This document shows positions 2,923 to 59,663 of a stretch of 64,000 nucleotides of DNA, in pieces. Where the stretch lies: the IMG/VR virus record IMGVR_UViG_3300032296_003307, positions 204,740-268,739 of that record. One strand, 5' to 3'. Position 1 is the first letter of the stretch, and each line of letters begins with the position of its first letter. The notes beneath the pieces were generated by a model. It worked only from the letters and a program-made list of their open reading frames with translations. It ran no database searches and had not been told where the DNA came from. The position numbers and the translations under genes are program-made.

Positions 2923-2970
2923 AACAATAAATAGCTTGTTTGTTTAAAAAATATTCAATACCTTTGTATT

Positions 2971-3138
2971 ATGATGCCACCAAAATATCTACAAGACCTA
3001 CTTGAAATGTATGACAAGAATCTAACAATGTTCGTAGGCGACGTACCTGTTTTGTTTTTCACCACCACAATTGTACGTGAGGAAGAAGAACCAACAAAAG
3101 CACCAAAAGATAATATTTTACAATGTTCAGCGGGATAA
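2971..3138 (+). CDS. Small hypothetical protein, 55 aa (MMPPKYLQDLLEMYDK...CSAG)
   Basis: Read by eye (below the ORF-track cutoff). Preceded by a TAccTTTG -7 element at 2959-2966. Confidence 0.55.
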   Translation: MMPPKYLQDLLEMYDKNLTMFVGDVPVLFFTTTIVREEEEPTKAPKDNILQCSAG

Positions 3139-3193
3139 CTTGACGCTTTTTTAAAATTGGATATATTTATATCAAAACAAATTAAAACTTTCA

Positions 3194-3262
3194 ATGAAAA
3201 CCATTTTCATATTCGGGACACCAGCAACAGAGGGTGATACTTCCAAAGTGGAGATGGGATAA
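3194..3262 (+). CDS. Putative attenuator leader peptide MKTIFIFGTPATEGDTSKVEMG
   Basis: 22 codons after a TATTTAT motif (3164-3170) and an A-rich leader. Its 3' end overlaps the antiterminator strand GAGATGGG. Confidence 0.7.
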   Translation: MKTIFIFGTPATEGDTSKVEMG

Positions 3263-3315
3263 TATTGTCTTTAAGACCTTAAGAAAACCCATCTCAAAAA
3301 GATGGGTTTTTTTTT
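3251..3315 (+). terminator. Intrinsic terminator with competing antiterminator
   Basis: Terminator AAAACCCATCT(3284-3294)/AGATGGGTTTT(3300-3310) plus a T9 run. Alternative 8-bp helix GAGATGGG(3251-3258)/CCCATCTC(3288-3295). Confidence 0.8.
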
Positions 3316-3322
3316 GGTTTAA

Positions 3323-3354
3323 TTTGGCAAATCAAAAATAAAGTTGTAATTTTG
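3323..3354 (+). promoter_or_regulatory. Bacteroidota housekeeping-sigma promoter (-33 TTTG / -7 TAnnTTTG) for the tRNA array
   Basis: TTTG at 3323-3326, 20-nt spacer, TAATTTTG at 3347-3354. Confidence 0.75.
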
Positions 3355-3388
3355 TATCGTTGTTGAAAGAAACATCTGAAACAACAAA

Positions 3389-3400
3389 GTTCTTTGACAT
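3389..3400 (+). promoter_or_regulatory. boxA-like antitermination element
   Basis: GTTCTTTGACAT resembles rrn boxA (TGCTCTTTAACA-type) and lies 15 nt before the first tRNA. Confidence 0.65.
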
Positions 3401-4386: not shown

Positions 4387-4464
4387 CGCGGGATGGACTG
4401 GAGATGGTACCAGCTGAGTCTCATAAGCTCAATCACGGGGGTTCGAATCCCTCTCCCGCTACCA
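4387..4464 (+). tRNA. tRNA-Met(CAU), atypical (C1.U72 mismatch, encoded CCA)
   Basis: CGCGGGA/TCCCGCT-A-CCA, anticodon arm TGAGT-CTCATAA-GCTCA. Confidence 0.85.
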
Positions 4465-4467
4465 AAT

Positions 4468-4538
4468 CGTGGATTGGTGTAATGGTAACATATTGGGCTC
4501 ATAACCCAAAGTTCCGAGTTCGAGTCTCGGGTCCGCAA
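4468..4538 (+). tRNA. Initiator tRNA-fMet(CAU)
   Basis: C1.A72 mismatch and three consecutive G-C pairs in TTGGG-CTCATAA-CCCAA. Confidence 0.92.
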
Positions 4539-4544
4539 CTAAAT

Positions 4545-7084: not shown

Positions 7085-7149
7085 GATTTTATAAATATTT
7101 GTTTTTTTAATTAAACTGATATATATTTGTAAGGTAATGTAATAAAGAT

Positions 7150-7640: not shown

Positions 7641-7691
7641 CAAATTATAATTTTATTCCTTTTTTTATTGAGTTATCCATATTTATTTATT

Positions 7692-8318: not shown

Positions 8319-8330
8319 TATTTATAATAT

Positions 8331-9191: not shown

Positions 9192-9282
9192 TTTTCTTTT
9201 TATTAATTATACAAAATTAAATATATAAAAAAAAGGTAAAGTTCGCCATATTTATTGTGTATAGTAAAAATATTTATCATTT

Positions 9283-9686: not shown

Positions 9687-9691
9687 GTTTG

Positions 9692-10072
9692 TGGAGGTGG
9701 AGGGTATCGAACCCTCGTCCAGTCTACCTTGACTGTAAGGTACTACACGTTTAGGTTAACATTTGCTAATGTTCCAAACTTCACAATTCCCTTATTTTAT
9801 AGTGGTTCGGTTTACTGAGAACTAATCCTCCACTTGTTTCTTTTAAGATAGAAACCACACCTCTAAAGGACTTATGTTCCTAGGTTAATGTCCTCCCGAC
9901 CTGAGTGTTATAGCGATTAGGCTACAACTGAAGCCTCTTCACGGAACAAACCGCAAGCTGCCATGTTATTTAAAACGTTGCCGTCTAATTGGTTAAATCA
10001 GTTTTTAATGAGTTAATTCAGCTCATACGTGCACCTTACCTTCAAAAATACCTGTCAAATCCAGTCACCCCC
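9692..10072 (-). ncRNA. ssrA: tmRNA
   Basis: 5' GGGGGTGACTGGATTTGAC, 3' GAGGG-TTCGATA-CCCTC-CACCTCC-A with G3.U70. Tag ORF 9982-9917 encodes (A)GNVLNNMAACGLFREEASVVA. Confidence 0.92.
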
Positions 10073-10075: not shown

Positions 10076-10098
10076 TTTCAAAGAACACTACAAATATA
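10076..10098 (-). promoter_or_regulatory. Host-type -7 promoter plus boxA-like element for tmRNA
   Basis: On the minus strand, TATATTTG (10098-10091) followed by GTTCTTTGAAA (10086-10076). Confidence 0.65.
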
Positions 10099-10138
10099 CT
10101 AACACTATAAATATATTCCAAGTATTTATAAGAAACAT

Positions 10139-11971: not shown

Positions 11972-11993
11972 TTTTTCGTATCTTTGTATTCAA

Positions 11994-12863: not shown

Positions 12864-12891
12864 TTAATTATTTCGGCATATTTATTTAATT

Positions 12892-16306: not shown

Positions 16307-16343
16307 ACCACAAATATACAACTATGTTTCATATTATCAACTA

Positions 16344-16905: not shown

Positions 16906-16935
16906 TAACCCCCGACTTAGTTTCGGGGGTTTTTT
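16906..16935 (+). terminator. Intrinsic terminator
   Basis: AACCCCCGA...TCGGGGGTT followed by a T-run. Confidence 0.8.
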
Positions 16936-16948
16936 ATATTTATATTAT

Positions 16949-17526: not shown

Positions 17527-17548
17527 CATTTCCTTGTATTTATTATGG

Positions 17549-18301: not shown

Positions 18302-18341
18302 TTAAATATTCATTAAGTAACGCATATTTATATAGAAAAAA

Positions 18342-23476: not shown

Positions 23477-23507
23477 AACCCTATATTTATTGATATAGGG
23501 TTTTTTT
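23477..23507 (+). terminator. Terminator-like hairpin containing the TATTTAT motif, directly abutting the terminase ATG
   Basis: AACCCTATAT-ttattg-ATATAGGGTT plus a T-run ending at 23507. Confidence 0.7.
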
Positions 23508-27124: not shown

Positions 27125-27135
27125 TATTTATTATC

Positions 27136-27843: not shown

Positions 27844-28032
27844 TTAGTCGTTACTCTGTTTTGATTGTTTGTATTTCGCCTTTTTCATTTTTTCACGTTT
27901 CAAGGTCGTCTTTTTAACGTATTCTGTACGTTTTCTCAACTCCTCATTTTGTTTGGTTTTAATAACCTTACCTTTTAACGTTTTTAAGGCTTTTTCTAAA
28001 TTAGTGTTTTTGTCTATGTTTACTACTAGCAT
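27844..28032 (-). CDS. rpsU: Ribosomal protein bS21 (Bacteroidota type)
   Basis: MLVV..NLEKALKTLKGKV.KTK..EELRKR.EYVK.T..KR...KKAKYKQ matches the bS21 pattern. Confidence 0.9.
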   Translation of the reverse strand: MLVVNIDKNTNLEKALKTLKGKVIKTKQNEELRKRTEYVKKTTLKREKMKKAKYKQSKQSND

Positions 28033-28129
28033 ATATACTAAATAATACGAAAAGTGGAAAAAGTTTGACTGATGAATATACTATGTGTATATTTTTAAAA
28101 AATAAACTTTTCTATTATGATATTTTTTA

Positions 28130-28573: not shown

Positions 28574-28601
28574 TCTTCCATTATATTTATAACTAAAAGT
28601 T

Positions 28602-29312: not shown

Positions 29313-29322
29313 ATTAATTGAC

Positions 29323-29535: not shown

Positions 29536-29537
29536 TC

Positions 29538-29563: not shown

Positions 29564-29646
29564 TGTTTTTATTGGGTTCTTAAATCAAAGAATCTAACTT
29601 TTTTCAAGTTGGGGTATATTTATTATATACAATTTAATAACTTGAA

Positions 29647-33220: not shown

Positions 33221-33253
33221 TAAAAAAAGGGTCCAAAAAGGACCCTTTTTTTT
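33221..33253. terminator. Bidirectional terminator after the major capsid gene
   Basis: AAAAAAAGGGTCC-aaaaa-GGACCCTTTTTTT. Confidence 0.85.
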
Positions 33254-33492: not shown

Positions 33493-33517
33493 AATCTGAT
33501 ATTTATTAATATAAGAA

Positions 33518-36627: not shown

Positions 36628-36639
36628 CTATTATAAATA

Positions 36640-40660: not shown

Positions 40661-40686
40661 ATCTATAAATACTTTTCCTACGATTT

Positions 40687-41430
40687 TTAATCTAACATAC
40701 CATTTAAAACAAAGTAGTACATTTTTTTGAACTTTTTAATTGAGCCTCTTATTTCTTTGGTTGATAAGTTAGTCATTTCTCTTAAAGACAACAATATAAC
40801 ATTTTTATTAAACTTGTTATTCTCATTCCCTAAAAATATTTCTTTGTAATTCTCAAAAAGGTCTTGAAGTGCAAATCCTAATTTTTTTTCATTTTCAGTC
40901 AATTCATTTTGGTCCATCATTCTTTTTAATTCGTCTACAAATTTACCTATTACGTCTTGAGCATCAACAATTTCATACTCCAAATAATAAACCATGTCAG
41001 GTCTATTTTCTAAATTTGTTGATATGTCTTCATACGATACTTTACGATTAGTTTCTTTTTGGTCCTTAATGATTTGACCCATTAAATAATTCTTGCAAAT
41101 TGTACCAAAATATGAATAAGCCTTCTTTTCTTTAGAAGGCTTAAACTTATCAATTTTGGTCATTAAAAAAGAGTGAGTATCCGTATGAATTTCCTTAAAG
41201 TCCATGTCTTTACGATATAACTTGTATCTTCTTATTATTGAAGATATCATTTTATCTAATGGACCTCTTAGGTATTGATTGTAAATCTCGTTCTTTTCGT
41301 TAAATGTTGTTGCGGTTAGATACATTCTAACCGCCATTTCTTCTTCTACATCAAAGTAGTTTTCTTTTGTGGCTTTACGCCCCCTTTTTCTCGAAAGAAC
41401 TGTCGTTGTAGTCGTTTCATACGTGGACAT
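40687..41430 (-). CDS. Phage sigma factor (T4 gp55-like late sigma)
   Basis: ENYF...KIDKFKPSKEKKAYSYFGTICKNYLMGQIIKDQK resembles sigma region 2 and gp55 (NF...AYxTQxxxNAFxxRIKKE). Confidence 0.65.
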   Translation of the reverse strand: MSTYETTTTTVLSRKRGRKATKENYFDVEEEMAVRMYLTATTFNEKNEIYNQYLRGPLDKMISSIIRRYKLYRKDMDFKEIHTDTHSFLMTKIDKFKPSKEKKAYSYFGTICKNYLMGQIIKDQKETNRKVSYEDISTNLENRPDMVYYLEYEIVDAQDVIGKFVDELKRMMDQNELTENEKKLGFALQDLFENYKEIFLGNENNKFNKNVILLSLREMTNLSTKEIRGSIKKFKKMYYFVLNGMLD

Positions 41431-42233: not shown

Positions 42234-42237
42234 AATC

Positions 42238-43296: not shown

Positions 43297-43297
43297 A

Positions 43298-44878: not shown

Positions 44879-44879
44879 T

Positions 44880-48397: not shown

Positions 48398-48440
48398 ATA
48401 AAATAATTTAATTAAAAATCAAAAATTATCAATCTAAGAA

Positions 48441-49454: not shown

Positions 49455-49455
49455 A

Positions 49456-49932
49456 TTATAATATTTTTCTAACAACTTTAATTGGATTTCCGTAAGCTAA
49501 AACCGAATCAGGTACGTTTTTTGAAACCACACTTCCAGCACCAACTAAAGAATTTTCACCAATTATTACACCGCAAATTATAACTGAATTTGCACCGATA
49601 GAACACCCATCTTTAAATATTGTTTTTTTAAACCGATATGGTTTTTTCCAATCCCCGTTTACTTTCGGATATAAATCATTTGTTGTTACTGTGTTTGGAC
49701 CTAAAAAAACATTATTACCAATTTCAACACCTTCGTAAATTAACGAATGATTTTGTATTTTGCAGTTATCCCCAATTACAACATTAGGTCCTATGTGAAC
49801 ACCCTCTCCAATTACACAGTTTTTACCTATGGTTGAATTTTCACAGATGTGGCTAAATGCCCAAATTTTTGTATTTTCCCCAACGTTTTTTGTTTCTACT
49901 ATTGCGGTATCATGTATAAAAACATTTTCCAT
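49456..49932 (-). CDS. Hexapeptide-repeat N-acetyltransferase (WbpD/WlbB-like)
   Basis: FIHDTAIV, TKIWAFSHI, CKIQN, TNDLYP, SIGANS and YGNP. Confidence 0.88.
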   Translation of the reverse strand: MENVFIHDTAIVETKNVGENTKIWAFSHICENSTIGKNCVIGEGVHIGPNVVIGDNCKIQNHSLIYEGVEIGNNVFLGPNTVTTNDLYPKVNGDWKKPYRFKKTIFKDGCSIGANSVIICGVIIGENSLVGAGSVVSKNVPDSVLAYGNPIKVVRKIL

Positions 49933-49933
49933 A

Positions 49934-50722
49934 TTATTTAACTTTTTTATTTATTTGGTCAATCCAATATTCGTAATCAATCAATTCTTTACTGTTGTTT
50001 TTAACTTTTCGTATTTCTTTTTTAACAAGTTCAATATTATTTAAATCTATCGGGTTGTTCAAGAAAACTATTGGTAAAAATTTATACAGGGCGTTATATA
50101 TGGCGTCATACTTTGTCCTGTCACCAACACAAACAGGAATGCAGTCCAAATAAAGCGCCTCATAGGTTCTGATACACTCTAATCCGTTACCTGTTGGGGA
50201 AACCACTCCAATATACTCTTTCATTTTTTTAACGTATTCACGGTATGTTAATCCATACTCAAAGTCTATATTTTGTGATACCATGCAAATTTGTTTTATT
50301 AAATTCCTATAGTTTGGGTTGGTATAAACATTAAAATTTGCATACAATTTTTCATAAATTGGTTCTTGGTTTATTATCTCTTCTCCAGTTAAAAACGGTA
50401 ATTTTTCAAAAATGGCGTCGTTAATCATACCGTGACCTTCTCTTTTAGGTGCGTATTGATTTTCAACACCAATTGGTATTGGTGTTACAATGCTATTGTA
50501 TACGGTAGAATTTGTTGCAAATATGTGTTTTACGTTGTGTGGTTTTTGTTTAAGAATTTCTTCAGTAAAACTTATATCACCATTCATAATTAACATTACA
50601 ACCTTGTGAGGTATTGTTGACACCCTTCTGAATTCAGGTATTACATGGTCTATCTTACAAAAAACAATTCTTTCATCGTCGTGTAACTCAGAAAACCTGT
50701 TCATTTGAATTAAATTGTTCAT
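49934..50722 (-). CDS. Exostosin/GT47-like glycosyltransferase
   Basis: PIPIG and VSPTGNGLECIRTYEALYLDCIPV; likely start MNNLIQ. Confidence 0.65.
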   Translation of the reverse strand: MNNLIQMNRFSELHDDERIVFCKIDHVIPEFRRVSTIPHKVVMLIMNGDISFTEEILKQKPHNVKHIFATNSTVYNSIVTPIPIGVENQYAPKREGHGMINDAIFEKLPFLTGEEIINQEPIYEKLYANFNVYTNPNYRNLIKQICMVSQNIDFEYGLTYREYVKKMKEYIGVVSPTGNGLECIRTYEALYLDCIPVCVGDRTKYDAIYNALYKFLPIVFLNNPIDLNNIELVKKEIRKVKNNSKELIDYEYWIDQINKKVK

Positions 50723-50723
50723 C

Positions 50724-51512
50724 TTATATAAAGTAGGGTATTTTATCAAATAAAGTATCTAAATAATTTTTGTGTTCACTGTATGGTCTTACAGAATGGC
50801 ACTCTATATAAAAATTTTTATTTAAAAGAATTTCGTTGTAGGGTACCTCAATATTTCTGTAACAATCGACTCTCCTCTTTAAAAAATCCGATGATTTACT
50901 AAGTGCGGATATTCTTTTTCTATAAGGAAAATTCATTAGTTTTTTACAACTGTATGCCTCGTCCATACCCCACTTATCACCCCACATTGTGATTACACCA
51001 CTATTTTCTAATTTTAATATTTCTTCTTCAAAAGTATCTTCAAAATCATAAACATCCCAAAACGTACTACCTTTTGCAATGTGATATGCGGAAGGGCTGT
51101 ATCCATTTTCATACCATGTTAATTTAGATTTACCCTCTAATTTATATTGGTCGTCTATCAACATAACATAGTTATCATCAGGAACGTCTTTTATAGTATC
51201 TCTTAAGAAGTAGGTACCTAAAGGTATTTGGTCAATACCCATAATAGCACAAACATCATCCTCAAAAAATTTTGTAAAATAAAATAAACCCCAAGTATAT
51301 TGCCAAGGTTTGATATCAGGAACCGATGGTTGTACTAAAATTTCCCCATATTCAGTAGATAAATTAATTTCATCTAATTCTTCTTGTGTTCCGAAAAATA
51401 TTAAGGTTGGTTTAATACCAAACTTTTCTTTATACGTAAAAGAAAGTTTGTTCCAAAAATCATAATACAATGGATTGTTATTTGTTGATAATATAACTCT
51501 ATCTACTTTCAT
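50724..51512 (-). CDS. Putative glycosyltransferase
   Basis: Cluster context, GIDQIPL (DxD-like) and WGMDE. Confidence 0.5.
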   Translation of the reverse strand: MKVDRVILSTNNNPLYYDFWNKLSFTYKEKFGIKPTLIFFGTQEELDEINLSTEYGEILVQPSVPDIKPWQYTWGLFYFTKFFEDDVCAIMGIDQIPLGTYFLRDTIKDVPDDNYVMLIDDQYKLEGKSKLTWYENGYSPSAYHIAKGSTFWDVYDFEDTFEEEILKLENSGVITMWGDKWGMDEAYSCKKLMNFPYRKRISALSKSSDFLKRRVDCYRNIEVPYNEILLNKNFYIECHSVRPYSEHKNYLDTLFDKIPYFI

Positions 51513-51515
51513 AAC

Positions 51516-52325
51516 TTAATTAATTGTTGTTCTGTGACTTCCGTGATAATACGAAATGTCTTTATTTTCCTCATAGTTTTTATTGTCTATTAGTGTTGAT
51601 AATATAACACCCCAAACAGGTAAGTCACCCCACCTATTACTATAAATCCCGTGTGAATCGTCCACCTCATCTAAAAACATACATACAATGTCATTATCTA
51701 AAAAGTATTGAATGTCTACTATCATAAAGTTGGTATACGGACACTTAATTTCTTCAAATGATTTATATGGAGAAATACCGTTAACTGAAATAAAACTCTC
51801 CCAAAGATTTTTTAAACCAACAATGACATAATCCTCGTCTTGTCCTTGAAACATTGGTGAGGAGAAATATATTTCATTCTCCGTCATACGTTTTATTGTA
51901 TTTGGGTCAAACTTGGTTACGACACAATCTTCATCAATTCTTATGATGTATTTGTAATTGGATAAATAATCCAAAAAATCCATAGACCAAAAATGACACA
52001 TGTGTTTGTATCCTAATGGAAAGGCCATTGACTGTGGTGTTGGTGGGCATAACAACATATTTATTTTGTTTTTCTTGTCGTCAAAAGCTGTTTTTGGGTA
52101 TGCCTTTTTAATATCAATAAACGTTAAGTTTAACCCTTTGCTATTGGACGAAATAAATGTTTGGTGTTCTTTGGTTATATTTCCTTCGTGAAAAAGTATT
52201 ATGTCATATTTTTCACTTGTTTTAGAAATAATGTTATCGTATATACTTTTGTTTCTAAGTATAAGATTTTGATATCCATTTAAGTCTTGATATCCTCTAG
52301 TTAATGCAACTATAGCGTTTTTCAT
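51516..52325 (-). CDS. GT15 (Kre2/Mnt1-like alpha-1,2-mannosyltransferase) homologue
   Basis: GYKHMCHFWS, YKYIIRIDED, YTNF and GIYSNRWGDLP match the GT15 signatures (YRHMCRF, YYWRVEP, RWGDA). Confidence 0.75.
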   Translation of the reverse strand: MKNAIVALTRGYQDLNGYQNLILRNKSIYDNIISKTSEKYDIILFHEGNITKEHQTFISSNSKGLNLTFIDIKKAYPKTAFDDKKNKINMLLCPPTPQSMAFPLGYKHMCHFWSMDFLDYLSNYKYIIRIDEDCVVTKFDPNTIKRMTENEIYFSSPMFQGQDEDYVIVGLKNLWESFISVNGISPYKSFEEIKCPYTNFMIVDIQYFLDNDIVCMFLDEVDDSHGIYSNRWGDLPVWGVILSTLIDNKNYEENKDISYYHGSHRTTIN

Positions 52326-52330
52326 AAAAA

Positions 52331-53761
52331 TTATGACATGTTGTTTGTTGTGAGTTTACCCATAATAGATTCGGTATCAACATAATGACCTTGAGTCTTG
52401 TGAGAATCCATTTGAAAATGTTTTAGAAAATTTGCAGTCAAGGCCATTTTTTTTCTATTGAATAATGAAAACAACGTTATTGAGCGCTCGTGATAGTGTC
52501 CTGCGTTTTTATCGTTTCTGAACTTAGTAACCAAAGGAACTACCCAATTCATGTACTTATCAAACACGTCTTTTCTAAATGTGGTATTGGATGTTGCAGA
52601 CCAATGTTGAACTGTTCCTTTTTGAACTGCTGCTTCAACACTGTTTTTTAAATCTAACCCATAGACTGATTTCATTGCTTCGTCCAAACCATTTATAAAT
52701 GGGGCGTGTTTGATAAACATGTTGTGATTTGCAGGGTATGGTATATACCCAATCATGTCTGTTTTTTCATAATAAAACTTAAACATGTTTGTTTCAAAAT
52801 CAGGTACATAGTTAATATCATACTCAAAAAGATTAACATATTCACTGTCAATTAAGTTGTGTTTCCATAAAGTATACCAACCAGTGAAAGAAGTTAATTG
52901 AGGATAGTTTTCCAAATTGCCTTCATAATTTCTAGAAATAATTATGTTTGGAACGTCCGTTAATTTGTCTATAGGTCTGTTCCCAACAAAAACATACTTG
53001 TAACTACTAAAACCAATAAATTTTTTTATTCTTTCAAACTCCAATAATAAATCTTGGTCGTGAATAAAAATAAAAGTTTTGACATATTTTTCAGGTTCGG
53101 TAATGTCTATAGGAAGTTTTTCTGAAAATTTTTCAACAAAAGATTCCCTATTAGATTCCCACTGTTCATTTGTTTGACCCACTGACAAATGAGTTACTCT
53201 AATGTCAGTACATATACCTATTTGAACGTTTTTAATGTAGTTTCTAAAACAGAAATCAATATCATAGAAATGAAATCCTTTTACAGACTCATCAAAATTT
53301 TCAACTATGTTTTTTTTGTTTACCGCAAAAAACAATCCATCCACAATAATTGTGGGTTCTAATTTGTTACCAATATCTTTAGAGTATTTGGACTCCCACT
53401 TCTTACCTTCCGATTCATGATTTACGATACCATACATGGCAGATGTCATTTCCCACCACCTACCTGTTTCGGGTAGATATTTTGTCCCTGCTAAACCTAT
53501 AATCCCATATTCAGGGTTTTTGTTGAAGTGTGATTTTAGTTTGTGAGCCCAACCATTAGTATCAAATTTTAAGTCGTCGTGACAAAAAACAACAATATCA
53601 TATTCAGATTGTTCTAAAATTTTGTTATAGACTTCCGTCAAAGAATATTGACCATTATTTTCTATCGGAATAATTTGAATTTTTTTATTACCAGATGTTT
53701 TCTTTAATTGTTCGATGTATTTTTCATCGATTTTACGAGTGCTATATCCTATTGTAATCAT
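52331..53761 (-). CDS. Two-domain glycosyltransferase (GT2-like N-domain plus a second GT-A-like domain)
   Basis: SLTEVYN, VFCHDD, GIIGLAG, VDGLF and FHFYDID; the second half has FEYD and HER. Confidence 0.8.
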   Translation of the reverse strand: MITIGYSTRKIDEKYIEQLKKTSGNKKIQIIPIENNGQYSLTEVYNKILEQSEYDIVVFCHDDLKFDTNGWAHKLKSHFNKNPEYGIIGLAGTKYLPETGRWWEMTSAMYGIVNHESEGKKWESKYSKDIGNKLEPTIIVDGLFFAVNKKNIVENFDESVKGFHFYDIDFCFRNYIKNVQIGICTDIRVTHLSVGQTNEQWESNRESFVEKFSEKLPIDITEPEKYVKTFIFIHDQDLLLEFERIKKFIGFSSYKYVFVGNRPIDKLTDVPNIIISRNYEGNLENYPQLTSFTGWYTLWKHNLIDSEYVNLFEYDINYVPDFETNMFKFYYEKTDMIGYIPYPANHNMFIKHAPFINGLDEAMKSVYGLDLKNSVEAAVQKGTVQHWSATSNTTFRKDVFDKYMNWVVPLVTKFRNDKNAGHYHERSITLFSLFNRKKMALTANFLKHFQMDSHKTQGHYVDTESIMGKLTTNNMS

Positions 53762-53764
53762 ATT

Positions 53765-54490
53765 TTAATTATACATAAAATCTCTTGCTAATGTATCTTC
53801 AACATCACAAAAATCAAATTTAGTTTGATGCCACTGCTCAGGTTTTTTAGTAGGACCATTATCTGACTGACCTCTTTCACACCTGATTATCCAATCTTCT
53901 AATGTTTTGTGATGGTAATGATTTAATTGTGCGGTGTCAATAGTTCCCTTATCATTGTAAGGACCAACAAAAAATTTTTTATTCGTATCCATTAAAGGAA
54001 CATTTGGATTGTGAGGAAGTACCATACGACCTCCTGATGACATTTTTAATATTGTTTTAACATGTCTATCAACATCTTTTTGTTTAATAGTAAATTGTTT
54101 TAATAGAGAATTAGAATTTTCGTCTCGTTTTAATTTACCATTAGCACCAAAAAATTGCCAGTTTATTCCAATTCCGCTTGGGTTATTATATTCTTCTAAA
54201 AATGAGTTAATGTTTTCGTGTTTTTTTAACACTAGAAATTCGTCGCAATCAAAAAAAGCCGCCCACTCGTATTCTGTTTTATATGTGTTTATAAAATGAT
54301 TATAAACTTCCATCTGTTTACGGTGCCCGTCATATTGTATTTTTTTTAAGTAAGGACGATTTATCTTACATCTCCAATCATTTTCATAGATTACAATTTC
54401 ATCAAATCCTAATTTATGATTGTAATCAATCCATTCTTCAATGTAATTGTCTTCGTCTTTCGCAATACAAATTAGTGCCGATTTTTTCAT
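53765..54490 (-). CDS. Glycosyltransferase (GT92/GT2_4-like)
   Basis: CIAKDE..YIEEWI.Y...LGFD and WAAFFDCDEFL. Confidence 0.8.
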   Translation of the reverse strand: MKKSALICIAKDEDNYIEEWIDYNHKLGFDEIVIYENDWRCKINRPYLKKIQYDGHRKQMEVYNHFINTYKTEYEWAAFFDCDEFLVLKKHENINSFLEEYNNPSGIGINWQFFGANGKLKRDENSNSLLKQFTIKQKDVDRHVKTILKMSSGGRMVLPHNPNVPLMDTNKKFFVGPYNDKGTIDTAQLNHYHHKTLEDWIIRCERGQSDNGPTKKPEQWHQTKFDFCDVEDTLARDFMYN

Positions 54491-55080
54491 AATCCCGTAC
54501 TCCCAAATCCATTTTCACCTCTTTCTCCACTGTCTATGTTTTTACTTTCTTTTATTACCACAACCTCACCATCCAAAACAGGTGACAAAACCGCTTGAGC
54601 TATTTTATCTCCTGATTTAATATGATAGTCTTCTTTATTTGTGTTAAAAATTATCACCATAACCTCTCCCGTATAACCTCTGTCTACAGTACCGGGAGAA
54701 TTTAAAACCATTAATCCTTTTTTAGACGCCAAACCGCTTTTAGAACGAATTTGCATTTCGTATCCAACAGGTATCTTGAATTTTAATCCTGTACCAACAA
54801 CCGCTCTTCCTAGTCCTGGTATGTTAACATCGTTAATTGCGTGTAAATCAAATCCACTATCAGACGGATAATTGTACAATGGTGTTACTGCGTTATCTTT
54901 AATTTTTTCATAGACTAATGTATGTCTATATCTGTCAACTTTAAAATTCCTTTCAAGTTCTTCTAAGTCTAAACCATCTAATAGTTGAGCATCACTTTCA
55001 GATATATCTTCTTTTATGGTTTGTTCTAACTCCTCTAGTAATTTTTTTAGTTCTTTTTCTAATTCGTCTCCGTAAATCAT
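54487..55080 (-). CDS. dut: Trimeric dUTPase with an acidic N-terminal extension
   Basis: SGFDL, RSKSG, NSPGTVDRGYTGE, KIAQ and RGENGFGSTG. Confidence 0.95.
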   Translation of the reverse strand: MIYGDELEKELKKLLEELEQTIKEDISESDAQLLDGLDLEELERNFKVDRYRHTLVYEKIKDNAVTPLYNYPSDSGFDLHAINDVNIPGLGRAVVGTGLKFKIPVGYEMQIRSKSGLASKKGLMVLNSPGTVDRGYTGEVMVIIFNTNKEDYHIKSGDKIAQAVLSPVLDGEVVVIKESKNIDSGERGENGFGSTGL

Positions 55081-55781
55081 TATCTTAAATTTTTTAATTT
55101 ATCTATTAGTTTAACCAACACAAGGACATCTCTTTCACAGTATTGACAAATCGCATCTAACATATCGTCTAACCAATATGCGTCATGTACTCGGTTACCG
55201 GTAACTTCACCTTCCTTTGATGACTCAACACCCATGGCGGCACACATTAATTCCAAAGACGCCAATCCCCAAGGATTACCCGCTCTCCACACTTCTAATG
55301 TGTCAATTGCTTTAACTTCCCATGGTTTTGTATCATGACGAGGTAATAGTTTTGAAGGTTCAATACCATTAATCATCATTCGTTTAATCATTACAGGGAT
55401 GTCAAAGTTTTTAATATTGTGACCACACATCCAAAAATTCAAATTGTGACACCTTTCAAAAAGATGGTTAACTTCTTTTAACAATTCATATTCATTATGG
55501 TTTTTAAGGACCTGAGAACGAACTTTACCTTCCTTATCAACAAACGCCATACACACACAAACAATCTTAGAAAATTCAGGAACCAATGCCGCTCTATTGT
55601 GGTAAACATCTTTCGATGGTAAACCCGCATCTTCAGGATAACGCTTCAAAAACCAATCAAAATAATTGTGAAATTGTTTGTGAAGCATTGGGTATTTTTC
55701 CTGTAAGTCTTCGTATGTTGATGTTATTCCGACAGTTTCTATGTCTAAGAATAAAATGTTTTGTAATGGTATGTCTATCAT
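55080..55781 (-). CDS. DEDDy 3'-5' exonuclease (PolB-exo-like)
   Basis: FLDIET, GHNIKNFDIP, IDT and YCERD. Confidence 0.88.
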   Translation of the reverse strand: MIDIPLQNILFLDIETVGITSTYEDLQEKYPMLHKQFHNYFDWFLKRYPEDAGLPSKDVYHNRAALVPEFSKIVCVCMAFVDKEGKVRSQVLKNHNEYELLKEVNHLFERCHNLNFWMCGHNIKNFDIPVMIKRMMINGIEPSKLLPRHDTKPWEVKAIDTLEVWRAGNPWGLASLELMCAAMGVESSKEGEVTGNRVHDAYWLDDMLDAICQYCERDVLVLVKLIDKLKNLR

Positions 55782-56992
55782 AAAATTGATTTGTAAAACT
55801 CTGCTCTTGTTTTTGTTACTGTATTTAAATCGTAAGTGTCTTTTACCGTTTCATATAATCTTTCACCCATATCTTTAACCATATTGGGATTATTGATTAA
55901 TTTTTTAATGAACTTATACCAATCACCATGATTTCTGTTTTCATCAACTAAAAGTGCGTTTCCGTCAACAAAGTTACCATTTTTTAGACAATGTTTCAAA
56001 TCAATAGTGTAGGGACCTACATTTGATGCGATAAGAGCCTTTTTGTAAAATCCCGCTTCAATAACTTTTAATTGAGACTTCATTCTGTTGAATACGTGAT
56101 TTTTAATTGGTGCTAATGACACATCAAATTTTGAGTAATTTTTTGCGTATGAAGTTACAGGTCTTGTCCAAACCCTTTGGTAAAAATTATTATCCCATTT
56201 AGTTGGACCTTCAAATTCTTTCCATTTCATAAGTTCAGTTTTATAGTCCGCCTCAACCATTTTATAATTGTTTGTAACAATTTCTTCATATCTAGCCCAA
56301 ACAGTTTCATGAGGTTCAATTGGTCTTCTTTTCTGTTCTCCCGTGTCTTTGTTAATTTCAGTTACAACTCCTCTAATGTCAAAACCACATAAATAAAACT
56401 GTGTTTCGTTTCTATGAGACTCCAAGTAATTACCTAACCCCTCTATTAACGCCATGTCGTGTAAATGTGAAGAACCTCCTAACCAACCAATTCTTAATTT
56501 ATCGGACTCTAAAGTAGGTTCCATAAACTGACCTTCCTTTGGATTAATTGCGTTAGGAAAAACAACAACATTTTTATTTAATTTACTAATTTCATCTGCG
56601 AAAATTTTTGTAGTTGTCATGACATAACCCGCAACCTTTAAATTTGCCATAATTTTTTCGTGAATTTTTTGTTGCACAATAATTTGATGTATTGGGTGTT
56701 CTTTTGTAGGTAACCAATAATCATCTAAATCCATGATAGTTTTAATTCCCATCATGTTTAGTATTTCTATAAATGTTTTTGCTTTATCATAATCACCACC
56801 TATAGTTCTATGAAAATGAACTATTTGATAGTTAGACCAAAAAGACAAATCGTCCATATTTGGTTCATACTCAATATCTACGTGAAAATCGTTTGGATAT
56901 AAGTTTTGTAAAAAAATGTGAGGGTCGACCGACCTAAACTTACCTACGCCTGTTTTATCTGAAGGCACTACTAAAACTTTAATTTTTGACAT
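55778..56992 (-). CDS. Glycosyltransferase, GT-B fold
   Basis: MDLDD, IGWLGGSSH and DVSLAPI...FNRMKSQLKVIEAG. Confidence 0.8.
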   Translation of the reverse strand: MSKIKVLVVPSDKTGVGKFRSVDPHIFLQNLYPNDFHVDIEYEPNMDDLSFWSNYQIVHFHRTIGGDYDKAKTFIEILNMMGIKTIMDLDDYWLPTKEHPIHQIIVQQKIHEKIMANLKVAGYVMTTTKIFADEISKLNKNVVVFPNAINPKEGQFMEPTLESDKLRIGWLGGSSHLHDMALIEGLGNYLESHRNETQFYLCGFDIRGVVTEINKDTGEQKRRPIEPHETVWARYEEIVTNNYKMVEADYKTELMKWKEFEGPTKWDNNFYQRVWTRPVTSYAKNYSKFDVSLAPIKNHVFNRMKSQLKVIEAGFYKKALIASNVGPYTIDLKHCLKNGNFVDGNALLVDENRNHGDWYKFIKKLINNPNMVKDMGERLYETVKDTYDLNTVTKTRAEFYKSIL

Positions 56993-57041
56993 CTTATTCT
57001 TTTCAGAAAAAGATACAAAAAATTACGTAAAAATCAAAAGA

Positions 57042-57632
57042 TTACTTAAGTTTTTTAATTTTAGAGATTTTTCCTTCAAAAATATGTTGACCAACTCTGA
57101 ATGAAAATAAATCATTTGATTTTGATGTTGACTCAACTAATAAACCGCTTTCAGATAAAATCTCACGTACGGCTTCTTTTACCATCTTTTTAATGTTTTG
57201 TGTTTCAGAGACATTTTGTCTTTGAGGTTGTCCTTGAGGTTGTTTCTTTACGGTTGTTTCTTCTTCTGAAAACAAATCTTTTTTCATTAATCTCGCCGCT
57301 TTGTTAACCAATTCATCACTTATTGATGGTCCCGCCATGGACGCAGGAGGTGCGATTGGATGCTCAATCATCAGTCTTTTTATTTCGTCAGGTAATTTAG
57401 AACTCATAATTCTATCCTTAGTTTGTGGAACTGGTGTTGAATTTTGTTTTTGTATTACCGCTTGTTCTGACATTAAAAAATCTTGTGGTATATTATACGA
57501 AGCTTGAGGTGTGTCAAAGTTTTCTACTATTGGATTAGAAACTGATTTATTGGCTCTAGGTGTATCGTTGTGTCTATCCATTATTTTTTTAGACACCATT
57601 AATTTCTGCATTAAAGAATTTTCGTCCATCAT
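57042..57632 (-). CDS. Hypothetical protein
   Basis: 196-aa ORF. Confidence 0.7.
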   Translation of the reverse strand: MMDENSLMQKLMVSKKIMDRHNDTPRANKSVSNPIVENFDTPQASYNIPQDFLMSEQAVIQKQNSTPVPQTKDRIMSSKLPDEIKRLMIEHPIAPPASMAGPSISDELVNKAARLMKKDLFSEEETTVKKQPQGQPQRQNVSETQNIKKMVKEAVREILSESGLLVESTSKSNDLFSFRVGQHIFEGKISKIKKLK

Positions 57633-57644
57633 ATTACTATATTA

Positions 57645-58025
57645 TCAAAATTTACTATTAATTATAACACGATTCATGCTTTTGTCACCATTAAAATTGT
57701 ATCCTGGTCTTGGAGTGTTAAATTTTTCTGTTGTTGGTTTAAACGACATTATTTTATCTAATCTAAATAATCTCCAAGAAGGTAAAGGTAAAACACCTAA
57801 GTACGCTTTGTGAGACGAGCCTTCATAGTCCCAAGCTCTTAAAACCAAGTTATTCGCCTTAGAATACCCTAAACATACAGGTTCTATTAAACGCAGACCT
57901 TTACCGCCAGGTTCGTCCCCGTCATAATAGATTACCGTGATATCTTTGTTTTTTATTGCTTTTTGAACGTCATTCAAATTAGCAACCTCCAACAGAATAC
58001 CTTTTAAGGTGTTTGTTAATTTCAT
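57645..58025 (-). CDS. Stand-alone WYL-domain protein
   Basis: AI.....V.IYY......G.R.IEP..LG......LRAW......WRLFRLDKI. Confidence 0.75.
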   Translation of the reverse strand: MKLTNTLKGILLEVANLNDVQKAIKNKDITVIYYDGDEPGGKGLRLIEPVCLGYSKANNLVLRAWDYEGSSHKAYLGVLPLPSWRLFRLDKIMSFKPTTEKFNTPRPGYNFNGDKSMNRVIINSKF

Positions 58026-58315
58026 TAAAAATCGGGATACCTTTTATTCTTATTGTATTTGTTTATTTTTATTTCAAGTTTTCTTTCAACTACATCTATA
58101 CTAGTACCCGCATCTTCATTGAAGATATCTAAAAATACTCCTGTACCCCTACCCAAAGTATCTCCATCGGCAATTGCGTCAGGTGAAGTAACTGAGTATT
58201 CGTCTGCTTTAGGCGTGTAGTCGTTTTTAACTTGGTTTACAACTCTTTGTCTGTCAGCAATTGCGGTTAACAAGTTAGTTGGTTGTGAATAATCTAAAGG
58301 GATTAAAGTTGCCAT
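58025..58315 (-). CDS. Hypothetical protein
   Basis: 96 aa, overlapping both neighbours. Confidence 0.65.
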   Translation of the reverse strand: MATLIPLDYSQPTNLLTAIADRQRVVNQVKNDYTPKADEYSVTSPDAIADGDTLGRGTGVFLDIFNEDAGTSIDVVERKLEIKINKYNKNKRYPDF

Positions 58316-58779
58316 AAATTTTCCATTAATTGATTTATCCTTTTGAGGCTGTTTAGTGCTTGCTCATTCATGTGTTTATCAACACCTGATTTGTGCGATT
58401 TTGATGGGGAATTGTTCATGTTTGATAATTGAGGTGAATAGTCTCTGTCCATTTGCATTCCCGTTTCTCTTTTGTTTCTGTCGGTCATTTCTAAACCTCT
58501 ACGAGCACCTGATAAGATAGATTCAACAAATTGTTTCATTTTAAGACCCCCATTTAAATTAAATTCAGGTCCATTTTGGTCACCTTTAAAAGAATCGAAA
58601 AAATTTTTAATTCTTTTTGCTTGTTGATATGTCATAGAGGTAGACCCTTGTAATTGTCTATTTCTTTCAAACCCGTCCTTACCTTGACCCGCAGCGCCGT
58701 GTTGTCGATACATATCTATAAGATGTTTTCTAACATCTTCAGGCATTTCGAATTTTTGACCATATAAATTACTATTCAT
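58303..58779 (-). CDS. Hypothetical protein
   Basis: 158 aa. Confidence 0.7.
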   Translation of the reverse strand: MNSNLYGQKFEMPEDVRKHLIDMYRQHGAAGQGKDGFERNRQLQGSTSMTYQQAKRIKNFFDSFKGDQNGPEFNLNGGLKMKQFVESILSGARRGLEMTDRNKRETGMQMDRDYSPQLSNMNNSPSKSHKSGVDKHMNEQALNSLKRINQLMENLWQL

Positions 58780-59620
58780 TCTTTAATAACATCATTAAAT
58801 CTCTAACAGACAAACCTTCCTTATTTGCCATTTTTTTCAACGCTTTAATATTCCTTCTTAACATAGAACTCGCGTCAATATCTTTTTTAGATATTTCGTG
58901 GTCATCCGTTTTTTTATGTAACAAATCTTCAATCATCTTCATCATCTTTTGTTTTTGTATTTCTGATAAAGTTGCTTTTGTTACAAAATTTTTATCTTTA
59001 TAATATTTTGAGCTTTTATCTCTTTTACCTGAAGGGTCTTTACCAAACTGTTTTGTTCTGTTATACGCCTCTTCGGGTTCCATTTCCATCTTATCTTTTA
59101 AGTACTTAAATGTTTCTTTTCCGTCTAATTCTTCGGTTTCTTCATATCCAAAGGCGTCCGAATAATCAACTTCTTGGATTGTTGGTTCGTCTTCTGTTGA
59201 TTCTCCATAATACACACGATAAGTTCCTGTGTATGGTGGTTTTGGCGTTCTTGTCGCTCTTACTGTTTGGTCCATAGTTTTTCTCGGATGCATTGACATA
59301 TCTAAAATTGGTGTAGAAGAGTCACTCATGGTTCCGTCAAAATCAATTAACTCTGAAACTTCTCCATTTTTTTTACTAACACGTGTAATAATTTTTTTCA
59401 AATCATCTATTGTGTATTTTTTGTCTTTTTGTTTACCCAAGTTAGAAACAACTTTTTTTAATTCCTTTTGATTTTTTTTAGGAACAGAAATTTTTTCGTC
59501 TTTTTTTCTTGCTTCAGAAAGTGTTCTTTGTACTGAAAAATAGACATCAATAGTATTTGCATTCTCCTTTAAGAAGAAGTAATACGGTTCAGCATAATAT
59601 TCTTTATTAAGTTCTATCAT
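58772..59620 (-). CDS. Hypothetical protein
   Basis: 282 aa; TATTTAT on the minus strand at 59638-59632. Confidence 0.7.
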   Translation of the reverse strand: MIELNKEYYAEPYYFFLKENANTIDVYFSVQRTLSEARKKDEKISVPKKNQKELKKVVSNLGKQKDKKYTIDDLKKIITRVSKKNGEVSELIDFDGTMSDSSTPILDMSMHPRKTMDQTVRATRTPKPPYTGTYRVYYGESTEDEPTIQEVDYSDAFGYEETEELDGKETFKYLKDKMEMEPEEAYNRTKQFGKDPSGKRDKSSKYYKDKNFVTKATLSEIQKQKMMKMIEDLLHKKTDDHEISKKDIDASSMLRRNIKALKKMANKEGLSVRDLMMLLKNE

Positions 59621-59663
59621 AATTACTAACTATAAATACATCATTAAAGGTATTTATTTTATA

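What the first reader, a model, noticed from the sequence alone, without database searches (positions are those of the whole stretch)
2927..59657. Two promoter classes: host TAnnTTTG versus a phage TATTTAT motif just upstream of start codons, with a gp55-like sigma in the window
Seen: sense-strand TATTTAT ends 4-23 nt before ATG at 3164, 7680, 8319, 9271, 10123, 12879, 16937, 17537, 18325, 23484, 27125, 28584, 29617, 33500 and 59651 (+), and at 2927, 7091, 36633, 40665 and 59632 (-). These genes include structural and lysis genes. tRNAs, tmRNA, clpC and the peptidase instead have TAnnTTTG. TATTTATA is the reverse complement of the T4 late promoter TATAAATA and is one base from the host-type TATATTTG. 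Inference: it is the late promoter read by the sigma at 40687-41430, and many late mRNAs are nearly leaderless, which may relate to the phage carrying bS21 and initiator tRNAs.
Basis: partly seen in the sequence, partly recalled or inferred. Interest (0 to 1): 0.7.

Follow-up and report, generated by a model that had tools for sequence, protein, structure and literature searches.

The report
Phage late promoter making leaderless mRNAs
A 269-kb freshwater phage of Bacteroidota carries the exact word TATTTAT just upstream of about a hundred mostly structural and lysis genes; it is most likely a late promoter read by a phage-encoded sigma factor, and at about half the sites it should produce mRNAs that begin directly at the AUG start codon.

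Summary
All 20 listed sites exist. Across the 268,739-bp genome, TATTTAT is the top 7-mer in the 40 nt upstream of ORF starts. It occurs upstream of 93 of 350 genes, against 13 ± 3.5 in local shuffles and 20 on the antisense strand.

The gap to the ATG peaks at 5 nt, with a tail to 33 nt. The 8-mer TATTTATW therefore occupies -12..-5 relative to the A of ATG. This is the published register of the Bacteroidota sigma-A -7 box TAnnTTTG, which in this phage also sits 4 nt from the ATG of at least 8 non-structural genes.

Across 122 related loci the word is conserved right after the sigma gene (119 of 122), while its distance to the next ATG drifts from 4-6 to 10-34 nt. It also follows strong terminators and precedes the tmRNA gene.

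ORF 40687-41430 is a divergent sigma-70-family protein. Its sigma-2 domain is well supported, the C-terminal domain is unclear, and gp55 membership is not established.

Best reading: a sigma-directed late promoter without a -35 element, giving many leaderless mRNAs. Novelty: new variant of a known kind.

The parts
40687..41430 (-). Divergent sigma-70-family protein (247 aa, P0001). It is the candidate reader of the TATTTAT promoters.
   Evidence: The protein alone reaches only 13-14 bits on Sigma70_r2. In the family alignment A2, 54 of 78 members hit Sigma70_r2, and the profile hits SigA region 2 at E 0.007 and gp55 at E 0.21. The AF2 model has pLDDT 90.8. Residues 24-147 align to gp55 with Z 10.9 and to sigma-2 domains with Z 9.5-10.3 at rmsd 2.5 A. 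Predicted binding to F. johnsoniae beta-prime 272-319 scores 0.73 against a best control of 0.00.
40665..40671 (-). TATTTAT, 4 nt before ATG 40660 (120 aa, then a 641-aa gene). This is the conserved site immediately after the sigma stop codon.
   Evidence: Conserved in 119 of 122 related loci.
36633..36639 (-). TATTTAT, 5 nt before ATG 36627 (503 aa).
2927..2933 (-). TATTTAT, 4 nt before ATG 2922 (264 aa, endolysin-like).
7091..7097 (-). TATTTAT, 6 nt before ATG 7084 (260 aa).
59632..59638 (-). TATTTAT, 11 nt before ATG 59620. It faces away from the site at 59651.
59651..59657 (+). TATTTAT, 6 nt before ATG 59664 (875 aa, lectin-like; followed by a collagen-repeat protein).
3164..3170 (+). TATTTAT, 23 nt before ATG 3194 (22-aa ORF, followed by a strong hairpin with a T run).
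7680..7686 (+). TATTTAT, 5 nt before ATG 7692 (208 aa).
8319..8325 (+). TATTTAT, 5 nt before ATG 8331 (209 aa, peptidase/endolysin-like). It directly abuts the upstream gene's stop codon.
9271..9277 (+). TATTTAT, 5 nt before ATG 9283 (118 aa).
10123..10129 (+). TATTTAT, 9 nt before ATG 10139 (610 aa).
12879..12885 (+). TATTTAT, 6 nt before ATG 12892 (468 aa, endolysin-like C-terminus).
16937..16943 (+). TATTTAT, 5 nt before ATG 16949. It lies 5 nt after the stem of the terminator at 16907-16931.
17537..17543 (+). TATTTAT, 5 nt before ATG 17549 (250 aa).
18325..18331 (+). TATTTAT, 10 nt before ATG 18342 (338 aa).
23484..23490 (+). TATTTAT, 17 nt before ATG 23508 (large terminase). It sits in the loop of the hairpin at 23477-23502.
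27125..27131 (+). TATTTAT, 4 nt before ATG 27136 (235 aa).
28584..28590 (+). TATTTAT, 11 nt before ATG 28602 (prohead protease).
29617..29623 (+). TATTTAT, 23 nt before ATG 29647 (547 aa). It follows the terminator at 29538-29562. The transcription unit runs on through the major capsid gene (31325-33208) to the terminator at 33222-33252.
   Evidence: This unit agrees with the co-transcription reported for related phages.
33500..33506 (+). TATTTAT, 11 nt before ATG 33518 (225 aa), after the terminator that follows the capsid gene.
10107..10113 (-). TATTTAT with the extended consensus (A before, A after), upstream of the tmRNA gene and 8 nt upstream of its host-type box.
9689..10072 (-). tmRNA gene, a non-coding target of the tandem promoters.
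   Evidence: Rfam RF00023, 99.5 bits. ARAGORN missed it.
10091..10098 (-). Host-type -7 box TATATTTG upstream of the tmRNA.
16311..16318 (-). Host-type -7 box TATATTTG, 4 nt before ATG 16306 (ClpC-like ATPase).
11979..11986 (+). Host-type -7 box TATCTTTG, 7 nt before ATG 11994 (peptidase).
3347..3354 (+). Host-type -7 box TAATTTTG with TTTG 20 nt upstream. It heads the tRNA array that starts at 3416.
2959..2966 (+). Host-type -7 box TACCTTTG, 4 nt before ATG 2971 (55-aa ORF).
27847..28032 (-). bS21 gene. Its upstream carries TATTTAG, one mismatch from the motif, with 5 nt to the ATG (28044-28038).
4468..4539 (+). tRNA-Met with initiator hallmarks: a C1-A72 mismatch and GGG:CCC in the anticodon stem.
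   Evidence: read by eye.

Best explanation
TATTTAT (extended form A-TATTTAT-W) is the -10/-7-type element of the phage's late promoter class.

Proposed mechanism:
- Host core RNA polymerase reads it when loaded with the phage-encoded divergent sigma factor (ORF 40687-41430). It needs no -35/-33 element.
- Transcription starts at an A about 6 nt after the 7-mer.
- At about half of the sites that A is the A of the ATG, so the mRNA is leaderless (5'-AUG). At the remaining sites the leader is 3-30 nt and typically begins AACAAA.
- Non-structural genes, the tRNAs and the tmRNA use the host sigma-A promoter (TTTG-N19-20-TAnnTTTG), in several cases in the same leaderless register.
- The sigma gene carries no TATTTAT of its own. 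It ends a long co-directional gene array, and the first conserved TATTTAT lies right after its stop codon. This fits an early/middle-to-late cascade.

Shown here: the motif, its placement, its conservation, its register, and the sigma fold.

Inferred: the start site, the temporal class, and which protein reads the motif.
For: 1. Enrichment. 93 of 350 genes carry the word on the sense strand, against 13.1 ± 3.5 in local shuffles and 20 antisense. It is the top 7-mer found de novo.

2. Register. The gap peaks at 5 nt, which places TATTTATW at -12..-5 from the A of ATG. Published TSS maps put the Bacteroidota -7 box at -12..-5 with 4-5 nt to the TSS (PMC6847099; PMC9723704). Canonical host boxes in this phage sit exactly 4 nt from the ATG in 8 genes. 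TA at -12/-11 occurs in 107 of 350 genes, against about 11% at neighbouring offsets.

3. Start-site base. Leadered and leaderless sites both have A at the sixth base after the word (72% and 65%).

4. No conserved -35-like element upstream.

5. Footprint across relatives. In 122 distinct relatives with sigma identity of 30-76%, TATTTA lies within 90 nt after the sigma stop in 119 (about 9% expected). It lies before the sigma start in only 3. The distance to the next ATG changes from 4-6 nt to 10-34 nt in distant relatives.

6. Terminators. The order terminator, motif, ATG occurs at 16931/16937, 29562/29617 and 33252/33500. These units match the co-transcription seen in metatranscriptomes of related bS21 phages.

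7. The word also precedes the non-coding tmRNA gene.

8. Gene sets. Terminase, protease, the capsid unit, endolysin-like genes and fibre-like genes carry the phage word. RNA ligase, epimerase, phosphoesterase and a HAD RNA-repair gene carry the host box.

9. Sigma evidence. The complex model with beta-prime clamp helices scores 0.73 against a best control of 0.00. That mark was reached by 51 of 78 solved complexes and 2 of 108 mismatched pairs. The runs agree in at least 84% of contacts, and the partner's pLDDT is at least 77.

10. Shared sigma. P0001 is the only sigma-like gene shared by this genome and five large relatives. The second, ECF-like sigma here is itself preceded by TATTTAT.

11. 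No phage RNA polymerase was detected.
Against: - No transcription start site was observed. The public RNA runs hold only short assembled contigs of relatives and show no pile-ups of 5' ends.
- The sigma protein alone is below Pfam's threshold. Its C-terminal domain is only weakly sigma-4-like (best Z 5.8, mixed with unrelated helical proteins).
- About 125 further copies of the word lie elsewhere in the genome. The 7-mer alone therefore cannot be sufficient.
- The complex prediction may reflect resemblance to solved sigma-2/beta-prime complexes rather than binding by this particular protein.
- How the sigma gene itself is transcribed is unresolved. The only intergenic candidate is a near-consensus host-type promoter at about 57038.
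- 'Late' timing is inferred from gene function only.
Confidence: 0.6

Rival explanations
1. TATTTAT is a promoter element, but it is read by something other than P0001. The reader could be the host sigma-A holoenzyme, treating it as a variant -7 box and perhaps after phage-induced modification or sigma appropriation. It could also be the second phage sigma: the ECF-like protein in this genome, or the ~270-aa sigma-A-like protein in relatives.
For: The word shares T-12, A-11, T-8 and T-6 with TAnnTTTG and occupies the same register. Every large genome examined carries a second, more canonical sigma gene.
Against: The word lacks T-7 and G-5, which are nearly invariant in host promoters, and it has no -33 element. 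The second sigma is of a different type in this genome than in its relatives, and the two are not detectably homologous, yet the word is the same. The ECF-like gene is itself downstream of a TATTTAT. The sigma-A-like genes of relatives show host-type or no TATTTAT upstream. P0001 is the shared component, and the word always follows its gene.
Confidence: 0.2
2. TATTTAT is transcribed and acts in the mRNA as a phage-specific translation-initiation signal. It would be a ribosome-binding or enhancer element, possibly used by ribosomes that carry the phage bS21.
For: The tight 4-6 nt gap to the ATG at half of the sites resembles a Shine-Dalgarno spacing. The host phylum lacks Shine-Dalgarno use, and the phage encodes bS21 and an initiator tRNA. 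There are no TSS data.
Against: - The distance to the ATG is not conserved in orthologues (4-6 nt against 10-34 nt), while the word is.
- Within this genome, 40% of sites lie 8-33 nt away.
- The register is identical to that of the established host -7 box.
- The word sits directly after strong terminators with no other promoter-like element upstream.
- It precedes a tmRNA gene.
- It co-occurs with a sigma family.
Confidence: 0.1
3. TATTTAT is an RNA-processing site. An endoribonuclease would cut AU-rich sequence there and generate mature 5' ends next to start codons.
For: The word is AU-rich, single-strand-prone and close to the ATG. Phages are known to process mRNAs (own knowledge: T4 RegB).
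Against: The points against the translation rival apply here too. In addition, the word appears after terminators, where no upstream transcript is expected, and inside the loop of a terminator hairpin. It is also strictly strand-specific and conserved as DNA next to a sigma gene.
Confidence: 0.05

Closest known systems
Phage T4 late transcription: gp55 sigma with the late promoter TATAAATA at -13..-6
   Same: A phage-encoded, highly diverged sigma-2-type protein redirects host core polymerase to a single AT-rich 8-bp element that lacks a -35 box, upstream of structural and lysis genes. The N-terminal domain of P0001 aligns to gp55 with Z 10.9 over 118 of 137 residues.
   Different: - The word read on the sense strand is TATTTATW, not TATAAATA.
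- P0001 is 247 aa and has an extra helical C-terminal domain.
- Profile similarity to gp55 is weak (E 0.21) and weaker than to SigA.
- No gp45 C-domain was found.
- Half of the promoters abut the ATG.
Bacteroidota housekeeping promoter (sigma-ABfr): -33 TTTG / -7 TAnnTTTG
   Same: The register is the same (-12..-5, with 4-5 nt to the start). T-12, A-11, T-8 and T-6 are shared.
   Different: There is A instead of T at -7 and W instead of G at -5. There is no -33 element. The gene set is different.
Thermus phage phiYS40 middle/late promoters, and leaderless expression in Deinococcus-Thermus
   Same: A -10-type element lies immediately next to the ORF and gives leaderless phage mRNAs. This rests on my own knowledge of Sevostyanova et al. 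2007 (listed in the references shown) and on the title and abstract of PMC12340547.
   Different: In Thermus the host itself uses leaderless mRNAs widely and, as far as I recall, no phage sigma is involved. Here the host phylum has only about 5.5% leaderless mRNAs, and a phage sigma is the candidate reader.
Freshwater bS21-encoding Bacteroidota phages (Chen et al. 2022, PMC9723584)
   Same: The gene neighbourhood is the same: terminase, portal, reverse-strand bS21, protease and capsid. The reported co-transcribed pairs agree with the units predicted here.
   Different: That paper does not mention a promoter, motif, sigma or leaderless mRNA. All of those terms have zero occurrences in its text.

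Membership tests
Sigma-70 family | Region 2 (sigma-2 domain, Pfam PF04542) | tested here: met
   The protein alone reaches 13-14 bits, below the cut-off of 24. However, 54 of 78 family members hit PF04542 (best E 5e-7), and the family profile hits SigA region 2 at E 0.007. The model's residues 25-130 superpose on sigma-2 domains with Z 9.5-10.3 at rmsd 2.5 A.
Sigma-70 family | Region 4 helix-turn-helix (sigma-4 domain) | tested here: inconclusive
   There is no Pfam or PDB sequence hit for residues 150-247. The domain model (pLDDT 90.5) has a best Z of 5.8. SigH, SigE region 4 and Sig28 score Z 5.1-5.5 but are mixed with unrelated helical proteins.
Sigma-70 family | Binds the clamp helices of the RNA polymerase beta-prime subunit | tested here: met
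   This is a prediction only. The complex model with F. johnsoniae beta-prime 200-400 scores 0.73 against a best control of 0.00. That mark was reached by 51 of 78 solved complexes and 2 of 108 mismatched pairs. The runs agree in at least 84% of contacts, and the partner's pLDDT is at least 77. Contacts fall on beta-prime 272-319. The result may reflect likeness to solved complexes.
T4 gp55 late sigma | Specific homology to gp55 beyond the general sigma-2 fold | tested here: inconclusive
   The family profile hits gp55 (7d7c_F) at E 0.21. The structural match is Z 10.9 with 18% identity, similar to other sigma-2 domains. There is no PHROG hit.
T4 gp55 late sigma | Sigma-2-only architecture (~185 aa, no second globular domain) | tested here: not met
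   P0001 is 247 aa and has a confidently folded C-terminal helical domain at residues 157-246.
T4 gp55 late sigma | Works with a gp45-type sliding clamp and gp33 | tested here: inconclusive
   The gp45 C-terminal domain (PF09116) was not found in the genome. gp33 was not searched. Other clamp types were not examined.
T4 gp55 late sigma | Promoter is a single -10-region element without a -35 box | tested here: met
   No information content is seen upstream of the word out to -45.
Leaderless mRNA genes | The -10-type box sits at a fixed distance, so that the start site falls on the A of the ATG | tested here: met
   The gap is 4-6 nt for 50 of 93 phage-type sites and 4 nt for 8 host-type sites. 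This equals the published box-to-TSS distance.
Leaderless mRNA genes | Mapped 5' triphosphate end at the AUG | not testable with these tools
   Only assembled RNA contigs of relatives were available. No 5'-end pile-ups were seen.

The most novel reading that the evidence does not exclude
The phage switches the infected Bacteroidota cell to a leaderless mode of gene expression. Its own sigma would produce 5'-AUG late mRNAs from box-adjacent promoters. The phage-encoded bS21 and initiator tRNA would then bias host ribosomes, which normally see about 5% leaderless mRNAs, towards initiating on them. In this reading the promoter word, the sigma, bS21 and tRNA-fMet form one take-over system, shared by thousands of uncultured freshwater phages.
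Probability: 0.2. Interest if true: 0.8.

Novelty: new variant of a known kind. Interest (0 to 1): 0.6.

Why it matters
- **Regulatory map.** It gives a concrete regulatory map for a very abundant but uncultured group of freshwater jumbo phages. The sigma family has more than 1,100 clusters at 50% identity and carries no family annotation.
- **Unannotated sigma.** It assigns a likely function to that 'hypothetical protein' and predicts its DNA word.
- **Testable link to bS21.** It shows that a phage of a phylum poor in leaderless mRNAs places both host-type and phage-type promoter boxes flush against start codons. This makes the open question of why these phages carry bS21 and an initiator tRNA experimentally approachable.
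- **Annotation and engineering.** The word, together with the host box, improves start-codon and operon annotation in these genomes. It also offers an orthogonal sigma/promoter pair for Bacteroidota genetics.

Tried and rejected
- **RNA evidence.** Two run searches and one lay of four metatranscriptomes on 27000-32900 gave only short assembled contigs, mostly of conserved capsid parts from relatives at 90-95% identity. No 5'-end information came out of them. The second lay was not used because the same limitation applies.
- **Single-sequence Pfam and PHROG scans** of the sigma and its neighbours gave no hits. The shallow alignment A1 against the PDB gave nothing relevant.
- **blastn of the structural block** against deposited phage genomes found no match.
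- **Phage RNA polymerases.** The beta-prime domain and the T7-type family were not found. The T7-type control rang nowhere, so that negative is weak.
- **The sigma-70-type consensus scan** is not enriched, as expected for this host.
- **Chance or AT-richness as an explanation** is rejected by local shuffles and by same-composition permutations.
- **A loose third pattern, TTG(G)-N17-21-TATAWT,** is not enriched genome-wide (152 against 147 in shuffles). Only a small subset in the leaderless register looks real.
- **The phiYS40 paper** could not be read.
- **Literature searches** found no prior description of the word or of this sigma.

Full report
**Context**

The window is the last 64 kb of a 268,739-bp IMG/VR phage record with 32% G+C. 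It encodes:
- a large terminase (23508),
- a portal protein (25307),
- a reverse-strand ribosomal protein bS21 (27847-28032),
- a prohead protease (28602),
- a major capsid protein (31325),
- twelve tRNAs and a tmRNA.

This is the gene neighbourhood described for freshwater bS21 phages predicted to infect Bacteroidota (PMC9723584). No deposited phage genome resembles it at the DNA level.

**Checking the observation**

Each lies 4-23 nt before an ATG that opens an ORF.

The bare count in the window is not unusual: 45 sites against 35 ± 5.8 in shuffles. The placement is. I used a crude ORF set of 350 genes for the whole genome. In that set TATTTAT is the most enriched 7-mer in the 40 nt upstream of starts.
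- 93 genes carry it on the sense strand, against 5.1 expected from genome-wide frequency and 20 on the antisense strand.
- Shuffling each upstream region separately gives 13.1 ± 3.5, with a maximum of 24 in 500 shuffles.
- The best of the 20 other words of the same composition reaches 39, and it overlaps the motif.

The gap between the word and the ATG is 5 nt in 31 genes, 4 nt in 8 and 6 nt in 11. A tail extends to 33 nt. Functional copies prefer A just before the word (71%, against 38% at other copies) and A or T just after it. About ten more copies precede ORFs that my gene set had missed. The exact word is strict: among genes of at least 70 aa, no one-mismatch variant occupies the same register.

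**The register argument**

A 7-mer followed by 5 nt is the same as the 8-mer TATTTATW followed by 4 nt. This places the 8-mer at -12..-5 relative to the A of the ATG.

Published start-site maps of Flavobacterium place the housekeeping -7 box TAnnTTTG at -12..-5, with 4 or 5 nt between the box and the start site (PMC6847099; PMC9723704).

In this phage, canonical TAnnTTTG boxes sit exactly 4 nt from the ATG of eight genes. Several of them have TTTG 19-20 nt further upstream. A few more sit at 5-7 nt. So two different boxes, one of them an established promoter element, occupy the same register relative to start codons.

The dinucleotide TA at -12/-11 is present in 107 of 350 genes, against about 11% at neighbouring offsets. 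In sites with a longer gap (8 nt or more), the base at the sixth position after the word is A in 72%. The sequence often continues AACAAA. In the short-gap class that same position is the A of the ATG.

The simplest reading is a fixed start site about 6 nt after the word. That gives 5'-AUG mRNAs at roughly half of the sites. Host flavobacteria have only about 5.5% leaderless mRNAs.

**Comparative evidence**

The sigma-like ORF has thousands of metagenomic homologues. It has 1,122 clusters at 50% identity. I fetched 160 loci around homologues.

In loci whose sigma is at least 55% identical to the window's, TATTTAT is again the top upstream 7-mer: 278 hits against 20 expected. Orthologous sites are counted repeatedly, so these are not independent events.

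The clearest result is a footprint. Among 122 distinct loci whose sigma is 30-76% identical, TATTTA lies within 90 nt after the sigma stop codon in 119 (about 9% expected). It lies within 80 nt before the sigma start in only 3. The flanking bases are unrelated across loci.

The distance from the word to the next ATG is 4-6 nt where the sigma is at least 50% identical. It is 10-34 nt in more distant relatives. A conserved word whose distance to the start codon is free to change fits a promoter. It does not fit a ribosome-positioning signal.

**Transcription-unit evidence**

Strong hairpin-plus-T-run terminators on the plus strand end at 16931, 29562 and 33252. Each is followed within a few dozen bases by the word and an ATG.

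At the terminase gene the word sits in the loop of the hairpin at 23477-23502.

The unit predicted from 29617 to the terminator at 33252 contains a 547-aa gene and the capsid gene, which has no word of its own. The protease and its small downstream gene end at the terminator at 29562. The metatranscriptome study of related phages reported co-transcription of exactly these pairs.

The word, with its extended consensus, also lies upstream of the non-coding tmRNA gene, 8 nt before that gene's host-type box. This is a single case and could be chance.

**Gene classes**

In the window the word precedes the following genes:
- the terminase,
- the protease,
- the capsid unit,
- three endolysin- or peptidase-like genes,
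- a lectin-like 875-aa protein followed by a collagen-repeat protein,
- several unknown genes.

Host-type boxes precede the tRNA array, the tmRNA, a ClpC-like ATPase and a peptidase. Elsewhere in the genome they precede an RNA ligase, an epimerase, a phosphoesterase and a HAD RNA-repair protein. This fits a late versus early/middle division, but timing was not measured.

**The sigma**

ORF 40687-41430 (P0001, 247 aa) has no significant Pfam or PHROG hit by itself. It does have a sub-threshold Sigma70_r2 match.
- With an alignment of 78 diverse homologues, 54 members match Sigma70_r2. The profile finds SigA region 2 (E 0.007-0.02), an ECF sigma (E 0.16) and T4 gp55 (E 0.21) among only six PDB hits.
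- The AlphaFold model has pLDDT 90.8.
- Foldseek's top 50 hits are almost all sigma factors, though with weak E-values.
- Residue-level alignment gives Z 10.9 to gp55 (118 of 137 residues, 18% identity). It gives Z 9.5-10.3 at rmsd 2.5 A to sigma-2 domains of SigB, SigE and RpoS.
- The C-terminal domain (150-247), modelled alone with pLDDT 90.5, has only weak matches. Sigma region 4 of SigH, SigE and Sig28 scores Z 5.1-5.5, interleaved with unrelated helical proteins.
- A complex prediction of residues 20-150 with residues 200-400 of F. johnsoniae beta-prime supports binding at the clamp helices (residues 272-319). The score is 0.73 against a best control of 0.00. That mark was reached by 51 of 78 solved complexes and 2 of 108 mismatched pairs. 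The runs agree in at least 84% of contacts, and the partner's pLDDT is at least 77. This may reflect likeness to solved sigma-core complexes.

The protein is therefore a divergent sigma-70-family member. Calling it gp55-like overstates what can be shown, and its two-domain architecture differs from gp55.

**Who reads the word**

No phage RNA polymerase was detected, so host core polymerase is the likely enzyme.

The genome has a second sigma, an ECF-like protein at genome position 158640-159206. That gene is itself preceded by TATTTAT with a 6-nt gap. It has no detectable homologue in five large relatives. Those relatives instead carry a sigma-A-like gene of about 270 aa, with host-type or no recognisable box upstream.

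The P0001 family is the only sigma-like gene common to all of these genomes, and all of them carry the word next to it. It is still inference.

How P0001 itself is expressed is not resolved. It ends a co-directional array of about 25 genes without the word. The best intergenic candidate is a near-consensus host-type promoter near 57038.

**Translation side**

One tRNA-Met (4468-4539) has a C1-A72 mismatch and three G:C pairs in the anticodon stem, the hallmarks of a bacterial initiator. I read this by eye.

bS21 has TATTTAG in the leaderless register.

From general knowledge, leaderless initiation depends on initiator tRNA and IF2 and is done by 70S ribosomes. A functional link between these genes and leaderless late mRNAs is attractive, but nothing here tests it.

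**Comparison and novelty**

The system works like T4 late transcription: a phage sigma and a single AT-rich box with no -35 element. It also works like the leaderless middle/late promoters of Thermus phage phiYS40.

It differs in four ways:
- The box is a two-position variant of the Bacteroidota -7 box, in the same register.
- The sigma is a separate, unannotated family with an extra domain.
- The leaderless layout is used for host-type promoters too.
- The host phylum rarely uses leaderless mRNAs.

I found no description of the word or of this sigma in the searchable literature. I rate it a new variant of a known kind.

**Limits**

- Gene calls are my own crude ORF set.
- Counts across relatives include orthologous repeats.
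- No start site was mapped.
- 'Late' is inferred from gene function.
- The sigma-promoter pairing is circumstantial.

Noticed in passing
Genome G000:C1:158640-159206 (outside the window; locus L174): A second phage sigma, ECF-like, with Sigma70_r2 and r4_2 both above the cut-off. Its own gene is preceded by TATTTAT with 6 nt to the ATG. It is absent from five large relatives, which instead carry a ~270-aa sigma-A-like gene. This suggests a further step in a sigma cascade whose target promoters are unknown.
   Followed up: partly
window 9689-10072 (-): A tmRNA gene found by Rfam (99.5 bits) but missed by ARAGORN. It is preceded by tandem phage-type and host-type boxes 8 nt apart.
   Followed up: partly
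window 4387-4539 (+): Two adjacent tRNA-Met(CAT) genes. The tRNA at 4468-4539 has canonical initiator features. The tRNA at 4387-4464 is odd: 78 nt, a C1-U72 mismatch, no GGG:CCC in the anticodon stem, and only 30.8 bits in Rfam.
   Followed up: partly
window 23477-23502 (+): A hairpin with a T run directly upstream of the terminase ATG carries the TATTTAT word in its loop. Terminator and promoter overlap within 26 nt.
   Followed up: no
Genome positions 2861, 23217, 74320, 76405, 80190, 85739, 88983 (left arm, outside the window): A small set of genes has TTGG-N19-20-TATATTnn with 4 nt to the ATG. This may be a third promoter class, possibly early, in the same leaderless register. The loose pattern is not enriched genome-wide (152 against 147).
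   Followed up: partly
window 41433-59620 (-): About 25 co-directional, tightly packed genes carry no TATTTAT. At least one is a family-2 glycosyltransferase. The array ends with the sigma gene. A near-consensus host-type promoter (TTTG-N19-TATCTTTT) lies at about 57038.
   Followed up: partly
window 59664-64000 (+): An 875-aa protein with a weak concanavalin/lectin-like match is followed by a protein with a long collagen triple-helix repeat region (E 7e-40). These are probably fibre or decoration proteins, driven by the divergent TATTTAT pair at 59632/59651.
   Followed up: no
Loci L005-L164 (relatives): The words ATACGA(A), TAAACG and ACGAGA are 6-8 fold enriched upstream of genes near the sigma locus in relatives. 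They were not seen among the top words in this genome. Their meaning is unknown.
   Followed up: no
window 14300-16306 (-): A 668-aa ClpC/ATP-dependent-protease-like ATPase (phrog_4871, E 4e-236) is encoded on the opposite strand within the late gene block. It is driven by a host-type box 4 nt from its ATG.
   Followed up: no
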